Made by a program: the position numbers and the translations under genes. From positions 34,920 through 98,919 of the forward strand of contig NIVC01000318.1 of NCBI GenBank assembly GCA_002269645.1: DNA of 64,000 bases. Reading direction: 5' to 3'. The notes under the pieces were generated by a model. It was given only the letters and a program-made list of their open reading frames with translations. It was not told where the DNA came from and ran no database searches. Origin of the DNA: Macrostomum lignano (taxonomy: Eukaryota). Below, piece by piece: positions 15,054-18,502 of this stretch (position 1 is its first letter; each line of letters opens with the position of its first letter).

Positions 15054-18000
15054 ATGAACTACAAATTTGTTTTATCGCTATCAGCCTGGCTGGTTCATGC
15101 TGCATCAGCCGAGTTCCAGTGCTTGGATGCCGATGGCTTTCCTCTGGACTGGTTCGCTCTGCTGAAGCAGCCGCACTCCGGACACTACGCCTACGTCAGC
15201 TCGAATTCGTCAACCGCCTGGATTCAGCCGGATGGCTGCGACATCACCCGGGATGGCCCCGTGTTCAGCACCGTCAGCCAGGTCCTGCAGGCCGGCTCCA
15301 ATGCCGCCGCCGATGTTCTGGCCGCGTACAACGACGAGCCGCCAGAGGACAACAACAGCAGCAGCATCGGCAGCAGCGCGTTCGGCCACATGAAAGGGCT
15401 CGTCGCTTTGAAGTCTGGCCAGAAAGGCTTCTGGCTGATCCACAGCGTGCCAAAGTTCCCGAACATGAGCCTGCATCGCTACGAGTACCCGGACACTGGG
15501 ATGAAATACGGCCAGAGCTTCCTTTGCCTGACCGTGGACAGCGCAAAGATGGCCAACATCATCGGCAGCCAGCTGTTCGTCTCGCACCCGGACCTCTACA
15601 GCCTCAGCGTCAGCCCCGCCGCCGAGGCCGCCTGGCCCAGCTGGGCAGATCTGAAGAAACGGAAGCAGCCACCGAAGGCTTTGATGAATTCCACTGTCAA
15701 GCTGGTGACCTCCGGTGGCCTGTCCGTGATGCACCTGGCCAAGTCTCCGCACCTGAAGCAGGACCTGTATTCTTACCTGTTGGCTGGTCAGCTTCAGTCG
15801 AACATTCAGGTATATTGCTTCTGTGGGATCACATCCAGTGGGATCACTGGAAATGACCCGTTGTATAATGACGTGAATCTCGCGTTTTACATGTATAGAA
15901 AATTAAATAAAGGCCAAACCTCACTTTACTCCGGATCTGAGTTGCACGCATCGAAAATTGCAGTAAAAGGACAGTTGCACTCGATTTTCTTAGAAATGAT
16001 CTTAAGGCGGGTAGGGAATCCAGCGGATTAGCAGGATCGCTAGCGCATTTGTACATGTTATTATAGAAAAAGCGGACTTTTCTCGACTGAATTAGTCTAT
16101 GGCCAAACCCCATTCAGCTCTAGAGTAGTAAATACACCAGTGATACTACAAATATATGTTCCTTCCGGTTCATTTCTAAGAAACCAACTGTATAGTGTCC
16201 TAATTCTTCCTTAGTTGTCCGTGGTTGCACGTAGAGAATTATCAGATATTTTGTACTGATTTGTAAAAAAATGTGTTTTTTAGATACTTCTATACTTCAA
16301 TACTTCTACAAAAGAAGAAGTGCAGTTTTACAAAATTTTTAGTAAATTTTTTGTTTTACATGTAATCGGTAGTTTTGCGTTTTGTGTTTTACGCAGGTAG
16401 AAACCTGGCAGCACGGCAAAGAGCTGCTGAATTCGACATGCAACAGGCGCTACAATGTCACCAAAGTGCTCGATGTTCGCATCGGGAACCAGACGCAGTT
16501 TAAGTCTACAAAGGACCATTCGAAGTGGTGCGTGACTGCCCAGACTGATGCCAAGCCGCACACGTGCATTGGCGATATGAACCGGGCAGAGACGCAGTAT
16601 CACCGGGGAGGCGGCATCGCTTGCATCGGCCTCGTCGGACTGCACAGTCTGTTTAAAGCGGCCGTGATCCACGACCAGGTGATGCTGACTGGGGCAATTG
16701 GTTTGGTATTGCAGTTGCTACGAGCTATTATTGGTTGTTCAGCTGTTCAGTGCTTCAGTTAATTAAACCATTTGCTGTTATTTCCAACTTAGTAGACAGT
16801 GCGTCACCCTCTGGAATATGGTTCCACCTGTTAGACAGTGTGTGTCACCCTCTGGAATATGGTTCCACCTGTTAGACAGTGTGTGTCACCCTCTGGAATA
16901 TGGTTCCACCTGTTAGACAGTGTGTGTCACCCTCTGGAATATGGTTCCACCTGTTAGACAGTGTGCGTCACCCTCTGGAATATGGTTCCACCTGTTAGAC
17001 AGTGTGTGTCACCCTCTGGAATATGGTTCCACCTGTTAGACAGTGTGTGTCACCCTCTGGAATATGGTTCCACCTGTTAGACAGTGTGTGTCACCCTCTG
17101 GAATATGGTTCCACCTGTTAGACAGTGTGTGTCACCCTCTGGAATATGGTTCCACCTGTTAGACAGTGTGCGTCACCCTCTGGAATATGGTTCCACCTGT
17201 TGGACAGTGTGTGTCACCCTCTGGAATATGGTTTGACCTGTTAGACAGTGTGTGTCACCCTCTGGAATATGGTTCCACCTGTTGGACAGTGTGTGTCACC
17301 CTCTGGAATATGGTTCCACCTGTTAGACAGTGTGTGTCACCCTCTGGAATATGGTTTGACCTGTTAGACAGTGTGTGTCACCCTCTGGAATATGGTTCCA
17401 CCTGTTAGACAGTGTGTGTCACCCTCTGGAATATGGTTCCACCTGTTAGACAGTGTGTGTCACCCTCTGGAATATGGAATTTCACCTGTTAGACAGTGTG
17501 TGTCACCCTCTGGAATATGGAATTTCACCTGTTAGACAGTGTGTGTCACCCTCTGGAATATGGAATTTCACCTGTTAGACAGTGTGCGTCACCCTCTGGA
17601 ATATGGTTCCACCTGTTAGACAGTGTGTGTCACCCTCTGGAATATGGTTTGACCTGTTAGACAGTGTGTGTCACCCTCTGGAATATGGTTCCACCTGTTA
17701 GACAGTGTGTGTCACCCTCTGGAATATGGTTCCACCTGTTAGACAGTGTGTGTCACCCTCTGGAATATGGTTCCACCTGTTAGACAGTGTGTGTCACCCT
17801 CTGGAATATGGTTTGACCTGTTAGACAGTGTGTGTCACCCTCTGGAATATGGTTCCACCTGTTAGACAGTGTGTGTCACCCTCTGGAATATGGTTCCACC
17901 TGTTAGACAGTGTGTGTCACCCTCTGGAATATGGTTCCACCTGTTAGACAGTGTGTGTCACCCTCTGGAATATGGTTCCACCTGTTAGACAGTGTGTGTC

Positions 18001-18502
18001 ACCCTCTGGAATATGGTTCCACCTGTTAGACAGTGTGTCACCCTCTGGAATATGGTTCCACCTGTTAGACAGTGTGTGTCACCCTCTGGAATATGGTTCC
18101 ACCTGTTAGACAGTGTGTGTCACCCTCTGGAATATGGTTCCACCTGTTAGACAGTGTGTCACCCTCTGGAATATGGTTCGACCTGTTAGACACGTACTGC
18201 ATGGCTGCACCTACCTGTATCGCAGCCATAATCTGTAAGCAGCTTATCTAACAGAAGCCAAAGTTTTTAAGCCACCATTAACCACCCGACAGCCTTGCGG
18301 TAGCGCCGGCCATACCAAGTCGGACAAAGAGCTGCTGCTGTCCCTGTACAACTGGGTGATGTTGGCGGCTGTGTGCGCGATGGCCTGCATCGTACTGTTG
18401 CTTGTTCTGCTGCTCACGATGGCTCTGGCTAAACTGAGAAGCCGCCAGCAGAAGGTGCTCAGCGGGAGCGGCAGCAGCGGGCAGAAATACCGGATCCTCT
18501 AG
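15054..18502 (+). CDS. DNASE2: Deoxyribonuclease II with predicted C-terminal transmembrane anchor
   Basis: Exons 15054-15809, 16397-16678 and 18293-18502, all phase 0. Signal peptide; motifs CLD..DWF..K, YNDEPP, GHMKG, LIHSVPKFP, YGQSFLC, VETWQHG, DHSKW, CIGDMNR, RGGG. Both catalytic His motifs are intact. The last exon is inferred from splice signals. Confidence 0.9.
16793..18190. repeat. 41-bp intronic minisatellite, ~34 copies
   Basis: Unit GTGTGTGTCACCCTCTGGAATATGGTTCCACCTGTTAGACA; no spacers. Confidence 0.96.

What the first reader, a model, noticed from the sequence alone, without database searches (positions are those of the whole stretch)
16397..18502. DNase II predicted to be a type I membrane protein with a terminal YxxPhi lysosomal signal
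Seen: beyond a 1.6-kb satellite-filled intron, a phase-0 exon (18293-18502) begins PC, supplying a final Cys after the nuclease domain. It then encodes a ~25-residue hydrophobic helix (WVMLAAVCAMACIVLLLVLLLTMALA), a basic stop-transfer (KLRSR) and a short tail ending KYRIL-stop. Established: characterised animal DNase II enzymes are soluble, and C-terminal YxxPhi motifs sort LAMP-like membrane proteins to lysosomes. Inference: a membrane-tethered acid DNase using adaptor-based rather than M6P targeting. Read-through at 16679 would give a different, unanchored end.
Basis: partly seen in the sequence, partly recalled or inferred. Interest (0 to 1): 0.7.

Follow-up and report, generated by a model that had tools for sequence, protein, structure and literature searches.

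The report
Membrane-anchored DNase II in a flatworm
A flatworm (Macrostomum lignano) gene for the acid DNA-degrading enzyme DNase II really does end in a membrane-spanning helix and a short tail ending in YRIL. This is an unusual, uncharacterised way of building this normally soluble enzyme, but whether the tail sends it to lysosomes is still untested.

Summary
The window is Macrostomum lignano contig NIVC01000318.1.

The exon 2/3 junction has independent support. The second codon of exon 3 encodes Cys348, which is invariant in 54 of 54 aligned DNase II homologues and sits at the family's fixed spacing from RGGG.

Residues 22-348 form a full DNase II domain with both HxK motifs and all six conserved cysteines. 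They are followed by an 18-residue linker, a 26-residue very hydrophobic helix (W367-A392), KLRSR and a 23-residue tail ending in YRIL. Type I topology is well supported.

The lysosomal-signal reading is only partly supported. YRIL fits YxxPhi and lies at the C-terminus. However, it is 19 residues from the membrane and is preceded by Lys rather than Gly, so it looks more like an endocytic or TGN signal than a LAMP signal. The only other copies available are near-identical, so conservation could not be tested.

Membrane-type ends are not unique in the family: Hemimastix, Chromera, an acanthocephalan and nematode CRN-7 proteins have them. None of those is characterised. Verdict: a new variant of a known kind, of moderate interest.

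The parts
15054..15809 (+). Exon 1 (M1-Q252). Contains the signal peptide M1-A19 (15054-15110) and the first catalytic HxK motif, H112-M-K114 (15387-15395).
   Evidence: Translation. Pfam DNase_II covers residues 22-348, E 2.4e-84. H112 and K114 are invariant in 54 homologues. AF2 helix 2-17.
15810..16396 (+). Intron 1 (GT...AG, 587 bp).
   Evidence: Matches the annotated gene span of PAA85566.1.
16397..16678 (+). Exon 2 (V253-Q346). Contains the second catalytic motif H293-S-K295 (16517-16525) and conserved C267, C309 and C328.
16679..18292 (+). Intron 2 (GTGATG...CGACAG, 1614 bp).
   Evidence: The same structure occurs in the paralogous locus L001.
16799..18192 (+). 41-bp minisatellite of 34 copies that fills intron 2. 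The paralogous copy L001 has 32 copies.
   Evidence: TRF. The pattern search gave 31 matches against 0 expected, all inside this intron.
16679..16762 (+). Read-through (intron-retention) extension: 27 codons (VMLTGAIGLVLQLLRAIIGCSAVQCFS) plus a TAA stop. It lacks the invariant Cys at the family spacing.
18293..18502 (+). Exon 3 (P347-L415 plus a TAG stop), phase 0.
   Evidence: Identical to the C-terminus of PAA85566.1 and of three further copies.
18296..18298 (+). Codon of Cys348, the sixth conserved cysteine of the DNase II fold.
   Evidence: Invariant in 54/54 aligned homologues. The RGGG-to-Cys spacing of 26 is kept in 225 of 246 motif occurrences.
18299..18352 (+). Lumenal linker G349-N366 between the nuclease domain and the membrane helix. 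It is a candidate site for proteolytic release.
   Evidence: Lowest model confidence, pLDDT <50 at 352-354. Cleavage is inference only.
18353..18430 (+). Predicted transmembrane helix W367-A392 (26 residues).
   Evidence: Kyte-Doolittle 3.16. Summed apparent insertion free energy about -5.4 on a biological scale quoted from memory. AF2 continuous helix 356-403.
18431..18499 (+). Cytosolic tail K393-L415 (23 residues): KLRSR stop-transfer, a Ser/Gly-rich spacer and a terminal KYRIL.
18488..18499 (+). Y412-R-I-L415, a YxxPhi match at the extreme C-terminus.
   Evidence: Read directly from the sequence. Chance estimate.
18570..18840 (+). Candidate polyadenylation signals: ATTAAA at 18570 and AATAAA at 18835.
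   Evidence: Not verified against transcript ends.

Best explanation
This is an intact, probably active DNase II gene of Macrostomum lignano (BOX15_Mlig011103g3). Its last exon turns the enzyme into a type I membrane protein.

Proposed mechanism:
1. The signal peptide (M1-A19) takes the chain into the ER.
2. The catalytic domain (residues 22-348) folds in the lumen. It has two HxK motifs, six conserved cysteines and 8 N-glycosylation sequons.
3. Helix W367-A392 stops transfer, with KLRSR on the cytosolic side.
4. A 23-residue tail is left in the cytosol.
5. I infer that the C-terminal Y412-R-I-L is read by the mu subunits of clathrin adaptors. These carry the protein, directly or via the cell surface, into the endosome/lysosome/phagosome system, where the acid nuclease faces the lumen.
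6. The enzyme may then be clipped in the flexible linker G349-N366 to give a soluble form, as happens with lysosomal acid phosphatase and PLD3.

Shown here: gene structure, domain, catalytic and cysteine conservation, and the hydrophobic helix with its tail.

Inferred: topology (probability about 0.9), endolysosomal destination (about 0.65), YRIL as the working signal (about 0.45) and cleavage (about 0.3).
For: - Identity to RNA-seq-derived GenBank and UniProt proteins in four gene copies, all with the same tail. The annotation method is described in PMC5730564.
- Pfam DNase_II E 2.4e-84 over residues 22-348.
- H112, K114, H293, K295, C158, C309, C328 and C348 are invariant in 54 homologues.
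- Exon 3 supplies C348 at the conserved spacing.
- AF2 model pLDDT 90.3 with helix 356-403. Its top structural match is Burkholderia thailandensis DNase II 5i3e, E 7e-22 (sequence match).
- Hydrophobicity 3.16, followed by basic residues.
- YRIL sits at the C-terminus.
- Precedent for lysosomal PLD-superfamily nucleases made as membrane precursors and cleaved in lysosomes: PLD3 (PMC10783504).
- DNase II enzymes act at acid pH in lysosomes (PMC5449587 abstract).
Against: - I saw no cDNA or junction reads directly; support for splicing comes through the annotation and conservation.
- The Tyr is 19 residues from the membrane and is preceded by Lys, unlike LAMP-1/LAMP-2/CD63/LAP signals (established knowledge, from memory of the sorting-signal literature).
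- A terminal YxxPhi has about 0.9% chance expectation, and it was noticed post hoc.
- The only other copies are near-identical paralogues (98% DNA identity including introns), so there is no evidence of selection on the tail.
- Cestode orthologues lack any TM.
- The Hemimastix TM-tailed homologue has no terminal YxxPhi.
- No TM or signal-peptide predictor was available.
Confidence: 0.5

Rival explanations
1. The protein is membrane-anchored and endolysosomal, but YRIL is not the sorting signal. Delivery would depend on something else, such as the transmembrane segment, ubiquitination of tail lysines with sorting into intralumenal vesicles as for PLD3, or lumenal glycan/receptor recognition. 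The terminal YxxPhi match would then be fortuitous.
For: - The motif is short. The chance of one somewhere in a 23-residue tail is about 17%.
- Its spacing and the missing Gly are not LAMP-like.
- The tail has three lysines (K393, K400, K411).
- PLD3 uses ubiquitin/ESCRT sorting (PMC10783504).
- The Hemimastix TM-tailed DNase II has no terminal YxxPhi.
Against: The motif sits exactly at the C-terminus (expected in about 0.9% of tails). No other known motif (di-leucine, NPxY, true KKxx) is present in the tail (read from the sequence).
Confidence: 0.25
2. It is a cell-surface or gut-lumen-facing ecto-nuclease. The anchor would hold DNase II on the apical membrane of gastrodermal cells to digest dietary DNA. 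YRIL would serve only for endocytic recycling or polarised sorting.
For: - C. elegans NUC-1 DNase II degrades bacterial DNA in the intestinal lumen and acts extracellularly (PMC2752799).
- YxxPhi signals 10-40 residues from the membrane are typically endocytic (established knowledge).
- Type I topology puts the catalytic domain outside the cell at the surface.
Against: - DNase II family enzymes need acid pH (PMC5449587 abstract).
- No expression or localisation data were found for this gene.
- An endocytic signal would in any case bring it into endosomes.
Confidence: 0.18
3. The membrane-anchored form is a minor or artefactual isoform. The main product would end elsewhere, through intron-2 retention giving the 373-aa VMLTG...QCFS end or use of one of the satellite's ACAG decoy acceptors.
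For: - I could not inspect reads.
- The true acceptor has a weak polypyrimidine tract.
- Each of the 34 satellite units ends in TTAGACAG, which resembles the real CCCGACAG acceptor.
- The read-through ORF stays open for 27 codons.
Against: - Every alternative end loses Cys348, which is invariant in 54/54 homologues.
- The RNA-seq-derived annotation gives the 415-aa product for three full-length loci. A fourth, 5'-truncated model (P0122, 303 aa) carries the same C-terminus.
- UniProt lists the same product for this species under separate accessions.
- The same exon is intact in all copies.
Confidence: 0.07

Closest known systems
Canonical animal DNase II (mammalian DNase II alpha/beta, Drosophila DNaseII, C. 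elegans NUC-1/CRN-6; Pfam PF03265)
   Same: - Full-length domain match.
- Both HxK catalytic motifs.
- Six conserved cysteines, including the C-terminal one.
- N-terminal signal peptide and multiple N-glycosylation sequons.
- About 30-35% identity.
   Different: Canonical proteins end 5-30 residues after the last Cys and are soluble or secreted. This one continues with a linker, a 26-residue TM helix and a 23-residue cytosolic tail.
Lysosomal acid phosphatase (ACP2/LAP)
   Same: A lysosomal hydrolase made as a type I membrane protein with a short cytosolic tail carrying a YxxPhi signal. It travels via the cell surface and is then clipped to a soluble lumenal enzyme. This is established knowledge (Braun et al. 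1989, listed in the references of PMC2121048). It is the closest functional analogy.
   Different: - Unrelated fold (histidine acid phosphatase).
- The LAP Tyr is about 8 residues from the membrane, follows a Gly and is not at the extreme C-terminus.
- Cleavage of the flatworm protein is only conjecture.
PLD3/PLD4 lysosomal 5' exonucleases
   Same: PLD-superfamily nucleases of the lysosome, synthesised as single-pass membrane glycoproteins with the catalytic domain in the lumen. They are converted to a soluble form in acidic compartments (PMC10783504).
   Different: - Type II (N-terminal anchor), not type I.
- Sorting is by ubiquitination and intralumenal vesicles, not YxxPhi.
- They are exonucleases acting on single strands.
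LAMP-1/LAMP-2/CD63-type GYxxPhi lysosomal signals
   Same: YxxPhi placed at the very C-terminus of a short cytosolic tail of a type I protein (CD63 is multi-pass).
   Different: The LAMP-type signal has Gly before the Tyr and lies 6-9 residues from the membrane. Here Lys precedes the Tyr, and 19 residues separate it from the helix.
Other predicted membrane-type DNase II homologues: Hemimastix kukwesjijk EP00696_P008087, Chromera velia Cvel_7347, Pomphorhynchus laevis KAI0987120.1 and the nematode CRN-7 group
   Same: - A DNase II domain joined to a hydrophobic membrane-type segment.
- The Hemimastix protein has the same layout: last Cys, spacer, TM, 27-residue tail.
   Different: - There is no sequence similarity in the tails, so the origins are probably independent.
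- The Chromera anchor is N-terminal.
- CRN-7, Pomphorhynchus and Dictyocaulus proteins end in the hydrophobic stretch with no cytosolic tail (GPI-signal-like).
- None ends in YxxPhi, and none has been studied.

Membership tests
DNase II (PF03265) | Full-length match to the family profile above the curated cut-off | tested here: met
   283.7 bits against a cut-off of 23. Residues 22-348 match profile positions 1-326 of 326.
DNase II (PF03265) | Two catalytic HxK motifs of the PLD-superfamily active site | tested here: met
   H112-M-K114 and H293-S-K295. H and K are invariant in 54 homologues.
DNase II (PF03265) | Conserved cysteine set, including the C-terminal Cys | tested here: met
   C23 (51/54), C158, C309, C328 and C348 (54/54 each) and C267 (53/54). 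C348 requires exon 3.
DNase II (PF03265) | DNase II fold | tested here: met
   AF2 pLDDT 90.3. Foldseek top hits are 5i3e/5unb, E 7e-22, TM-score 0.74 on the target.
DNase II (PF03265) | Cation-independent endonuclease activity at acid pH | not testable with these tools
   Needs an enzyme assay.
Type I single-pass membrane protein | Cleavable N-terminal signal peptide | tested here: inconclusive
   MNYKFVLSLSAWLVHAASA|EF has a hydrophobic core and A-S-A before the first conserved Cys. AF2 helix 2-17. No SignalP available.
Type I single-pass membrane protein | One hydrophobic helix of about 20 or more residues near the C-terminus, followed by cytosolic basic residues | tested here: met
   W367-A392, KD 3.16, then KLRSR. 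AF2 helix 356-403. No dedicated TM predictor available.
LAMP-type GYxxPhi lysosomal sorting signal | YxxPhi in a short cytosolic tail, at or near the C-terminus | tested here: met
   Y412-R-I-L415 are the last four residues of a 23-residue tail.
LAMP-type GYxxPhi lysosomal sorting signal | Gly immediately before the Tyr | tested here: not met
   K411 precedes Y412.
LAMP-type GYxxPhi lysosomal sorting signal | Tyr 6-9 residues from the membrane | tested here: not met
   19 residues (K393-K411) lie between A392 and Y412.
LAMP-type GYxxPhi lysosomal sorting signal | Tyr-dependent binding to AP mu subunits, and lysosomal steady-state location | not testable with these tools
   Needs a binding assay and localisation of wild type against Y412A.
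Membrane-bound precursor of a soluble lysosomal hydrolase (LAP/PLD3 type) | Proteolytic release of the lumenal domain in acidic compartments | not testable with these tools
   Only a flexible 18-residue linker with low pLDDT is seen.
GPI-anchored protein | Hydrophobic stretch at the extreme C-terminus with no hydrophilic cytosolic tail after it | tested here: not met
   A 23-residue hydrophilic, basic tail follows the helix. This contrasts with the CRN-7-type ends.

The most novel reading that the evidence does not exclude
The membrane-tethered form is the only kind of DNase II that Macrostomum lignano has. No second paralogue type appeared in two family searches. In that case the worm's whole lysosomal/phagosomal DNA-degrading capacity would be delivered by an adaptor-read cytosolic tail instead of a lumenal (M6P-type) tag. 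It would be an independently evolved, type I mirror image of the PLD3/PLD4 route for the same enzyme superfamily, and a natural experiment on how acid nucleases can be targeted.
Probability: 0.3. Interest if true: 0.5.

Novelty: new variant of a known kind. Interest (0 to 1): 0.35.

Why it matters
DNase II is the main acid DNase of lysosomes and phagosomes, and its loss causes DNA-driven inflammation in mammals. How it reaches its compartment outside vertebrates is poorly known.

A naturally membrane-anchored DNase II would show that the family can use the 'membrane precursor' route already known for lysosomal acid phosphatase and PLD3/4. It would also be easy to test, because M. lignano has working transgenesis (PMC5730564).

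The survey also shows that hydrophobic or membrane-type ends have arisen several times in the family without comment (nematode CRN-7, an acanthocephalan, Hemimastix, Chromera). CRN-7's weaker, non-diffusing behaviour in C. elegans may relate to this.

The significance is limited. The protein is already in the public databases, the anchoring is a prediction, and the sorting role of YRIL is a guess from four residues.

Tried and rejected
1. Exact-protein look-up of P0001 for transcript contigs found none on record. Look-ups of P0121 and P0123 returned only the NCBI genome contigs, so I obtained no independent cDNA contig.

2. The paralogous locus L001 was compared to look for selection on the tail. 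The loci are ~98% identical, introns included, and the proteins differ at only 2 residues. There is no power for dN/dS.

3. A tail-only protein search (69 aa), meant to find a donor gene for the TM exon, returned no candidates, not even the protein itself. It is uninformative.

4. The HMMER search of 1.84 billion representatives with exon 2+3 found no relative of the tail. Only P0001 aligned beyond query residue ~134.

5. A flatworm-profile search for a second, soluble M. lignano paralogue or for closer flatworm relatives found only cestode proteins (no TM) and the same M. lignano cluster.

6. Literature and supplement searches for Mlig011103 or for Macrostomum with DNase II gave nothing.

7. 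An ER-retrieval reading of the C-terminus (K-Y-R-I-L as KxKxx) was rejected. Position -3 is Arg, and di-lysine signals do not tolerate Arg (established knowledge).

8. A GPI-anchor reading was rejected for the spliced form because a hydrophilic tail follows the helix.

9. The idea that exon 3 is a separate small gene was rejected. Its only in-frame ATG is M369, inside the helix, and its second codon is the family's invariant Cys.
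Full report
**What the window is.** The stretch 9054-24502 of the window is identical to part of GenBank contig NIVC01000318.1 of the Macrostomum lignano Mlig_3_7 assembly. This is a free-living regenerating flatworm, not the arthropod that the tRNA and satellite content first suggested to me. The window is rich in minisatellites, with more than 25 arrays. A 'satellite-filled intron' is therefore normal for this genome.

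**Checking the observation.** Reading the sequence and translating it gives three exons:
- Exon 1: 15054-15809, M1-Q252, followed by a GT donor.
- Exon 2: 16397-16678, V253-Q346, with an AG before it and GTGATG after it.
- Exon 3: 18293-18502, P347-L415 plus TAG, preceded by CGACAG.

All junctions are in phase 0. Intron 2 is 1614 bp, of which 1394 bp (16799-18192) is a 41-bp repeat of 34 copies at 97% identity.

Exon 3 encodes PCGSAGHTKSDKELLLSLYNWVMLAAVCAMACIVLLLVLLLTMALAKLRSRQQKVLSGSGSSGQKYRIL. The 26-residue stretch W367-A392 has a best 19-residue Kyte-Doolittle mean of 3.16. Its summed apparent insertion energy is about -5.4 on a biological hydrophobicity scale that I quoted from memory. 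Read-through of the exon-2 donor adds VMLTGAIGLVLQLLRAIIGCSAVQCFS and stops at 16760-16762.

**Is the junction real?** I could not look at reads, but four lines of evidence agree.
1. The 415-aa product is residue-for-residue GenBank PAA85566.1 (BOX15_Mlig011103g3), and the gene span of 3449 bp is identical. The GenBank annotation of this assembly was made from a genome-guided transcriptome (StringTie/TACO on RNA-seq plus a mapped de novo transcriptome), not from ab initio prediction (PMC5730564).
2. Three further M. lignano entries carry exactly the same exon-3 product: A0A1I8GCS4, PAA94095.1 (g1) and the 5'-truncated PAA85587.1 (g2).
3. Cys348, the second codon of exon 3, is invariant in all 54 aligned homologues. 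It is one of six cysteines conserved family-wide (C23, C158, C267, C309, C328, C348). Its spacing of 26 residues from the RGGG motif is exact, and is kept in 225 of 246 motif occurrences among fetched homologues.
4. Of 360 AG dinucleotides between 16690 and 22000, 17 give a Cys at that position. Only 18293 also opens a long ORF of 69 codons.

The read-through end and any satellite decoy acceptor would lose this cysteine.

**What the protein is.**
- Pfam DNase_II matches residues 22-348 end to end, E 2.4e-84.
- Both HxK motifs (H112-x-K114 and H293-x-K295) are invariant.
- The only sequence-level PDB relative is Burkholderia thailandensis DNase II, 5i3e/5unb.
- An AlphaFold2 model built on the 54-sequence alignment has mean pLDDT 90.3. 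Its best Foldseek match is the same structure, E 7e-22.
- The model shows a helix at 2-17 (the signal peptide region), a compact domain ending in a strand at 342-345, a low-confidence linker (pLDDT below 50 at 352-354), and one continuous helix at 356-403 that contains the hydrophobic stretch.
- Eight N-x-S/T sequons lie in the domain.

The sequence therefore predicts a type I membrane glycoprotein. The nuclease is lumenal or extracellular, and a 23-residue tail (KLRSRQQKVLSGSGSSGQKYRIL) is cytosolic.

**Relatives and their ends.** Homologues are 27-37% identical and come from across animals and protists. Most end 5-30 residues after the last Cys. The cestode proteins, the nearest flatworm relatives found, end in ...CPxxIPWSKLSPSLPLN with no hydrophobic segment.

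I scanned 280 fetched family members for hydrophobic segments after the domain and identified their sources. The results were:
- Hemimastix kukwesjijk: a protein with the same layout (last Cys, spacer, TM, 27-residue tail) but an unrelated tail.
- Chromera velia: a protein with an N-terminal anchor.
- Nematode CRN-7 orthologues, Dictyocaulus, Oesophagostomum, Panagrolaimus and the acanthocephalan Pomphorhynchus: proteins that end in a hydrophobic stretch with no cytosolic tail, which looks like a GPI signal.

None of these ends in YxxPhi, and none is discussed in the DNase II papers I read. The C. elegans study does not mention CRN-7's hydrophobic end. The Trichinella study found no TM in its protein.

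An exhaustive HMMER search with exons 2+3 found no protein whose alignment reaches the tail, other than the M. lignano cluster itself. The tail is thus a lineage-specific addition, and membrane-type ends have arisen repeatedly in the family.

**How good is the 'lysosomal YxxPhi' reading?** YRIL fits the consensus and sits at the extreme C-terminus, as in LAMP-1, LAMP-2 and CD63. By the protein's own composition, a terminal YxxPhi is expected in about 0.9% of tails, and one anywhere in the tail in about 17%. One of 281 other fetched proteins ends that way.

Against a specifically lysosomal signal, two points come from established knowledge of sorting signals, quoted from memory:
- Those signals usually have Gly before the Tyr and lie 6-9 residues from the membrane.
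- Signals 10-40 residues out are typically endocytic or TGN-type.

Here the preceding residue is Lys and the distance is 19 residues. No di-leucine, NPxY or true di-lysine motif is present.

Conservation could not be tested. The other copies are ~98% identical at the DNA level even in introns, and differ at two residues (S/R336 and T/A354), neither in the helix or the tail. The motif is a reasonable candidate adaptor signal, but nothing more. The 'rather than M6P' clause was not tested.

**Most likely mechanism.** The steps are:
1. ER entry through the signal peptide.
2. Folding, disulfide formation and glycosylation in the lumen.
3. Stop-transfer at W367-A392.
4. Adaptor-mediated traffic of the membrane protein into the endosome/lysosome/phagosome system, where an acid nuclease is useful.
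5. Possibly, clipping in the G349-N366 linker to release a soluble enzyme.

This is the route of lysosomal acid phosphatase (type I, YxxPhi, via the cell surface; Braun et al. 1989, cited in PMC2121048). In mirror image, it is also the route of PLD3, a PLD-superfamily lysosomal nuclease made as a type II membrane protein and cleaved in acidic compartments (PMC10783504).

Three rivals remain:
- The anchor is real, but sorting uses something other than YRIL.
- The enzyme is an apical or gut-facing ecto-nuclease with an endocytic signal. C. elegans NUC-1 works in the gut lumen and at a distance.
- The anchored isoform is minor.

**Novelty and verdict.** The protein is already in GenBank and UniProt as an unstudied 'hypothetical protein / Deoxyribonuclease II'. 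I found no paper on it. A DNase II with a type I anchor and cytosolic tail is a new variant of a known enzyme family, using a known kind of targeting logic. The gene model and predicted topology are solid, while the lysosomal-signal claim is plausible but unproven. Interest is moderate.

Noticed in passing
window 14453-14525 (-): A tRNA-Lys (CTT) gene lies about 530 bp upstream of the DNase II start codon, on the opposite strand.
   Followed up: no
P0061, P0066, P0076, P0088, P0095, P0098, P0101 (Caenorhabditis CRN-7 group); P0021, P0184, P0045; P0249 (Pomphorhynchus): Nematode CRN-7-type and acanthocephalan DNase II proteins end in a 12-20-residue hydrophobic stretch right after the last conserved Cys, with no cytosolic tail (GPI-signal-like). 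The C. elegans DNase II paper I read does not mention this. It might explain why CRN-7 does not behave like the diffusible NUC-1.
   Followed up: partly
P0191 (Hemimastix kukwesjijk), P0133 (Chromera velia): Protist DNase II homologues with predicted membrane anchors. The Hemimastix protein has a C-terminal TM plus a 27-residue tail. The Chromera protein has an N-terminal signal-anchor and a long, highly charged C-terminal extension.
   Followed up: partly
window 16799-18192, compared with L001 7746-9057: The intron-2 minisatellite has 34 units here and 32 in the paralogous locus. Every unit ends in TTAGACAG, which resembles the real acceptor CCCGACAG at 18285-18292. That gives 34 decoy acceptors upstream of the true one.
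   Followed up: partly
window 16679-16762: The intron-retention tail (27 residues) is itself moderately hydrophobic (KD 1.92) but lacks the invariant Cys. This is probably chance.
   Followed up: partly
window 21509-25874 (+): A run of long ATG ORFs lies downstream of the DNase II gene. One has a PC4 domain (21509-22282) and one has integrase core plus chromodomain (22609-23679), which suggests a Ty3/gypsy-type retrotransposon remnant. The PCI-domain gene lies ~3 kb downstream of DNase II in L001. If the PCI ORF at 28682-29269 (-) is the same gene, it is ~10 kb away here, so this copy may carry an insertion.
   Followed up: partly
window 37708-38328 (-): An ORF with a strong Katanin p80 con80 domain match (E 1.9e-38).
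   Followed up: no
whole window, e.g. 226-1093, 1487-2384, 4329-5158, 8753-9793, 20652-21149, 26041-26857, 42119-43605: The density of minisatellite arrays is very high (periods of 15-54 bp, up to 1.5 kb each). The 26-bp unit at 20138-20574 recurs at 26041-26857.
   Followed up: no
P0122 (PAA85587.1, Mlig011103g2): One of the four M. lignano copies is annotated as a 303-aa protein starting at M113. It lacks the signal peptide and the His of the first HxK motif. This is probably a truncated model or copy.
   Followed up: no
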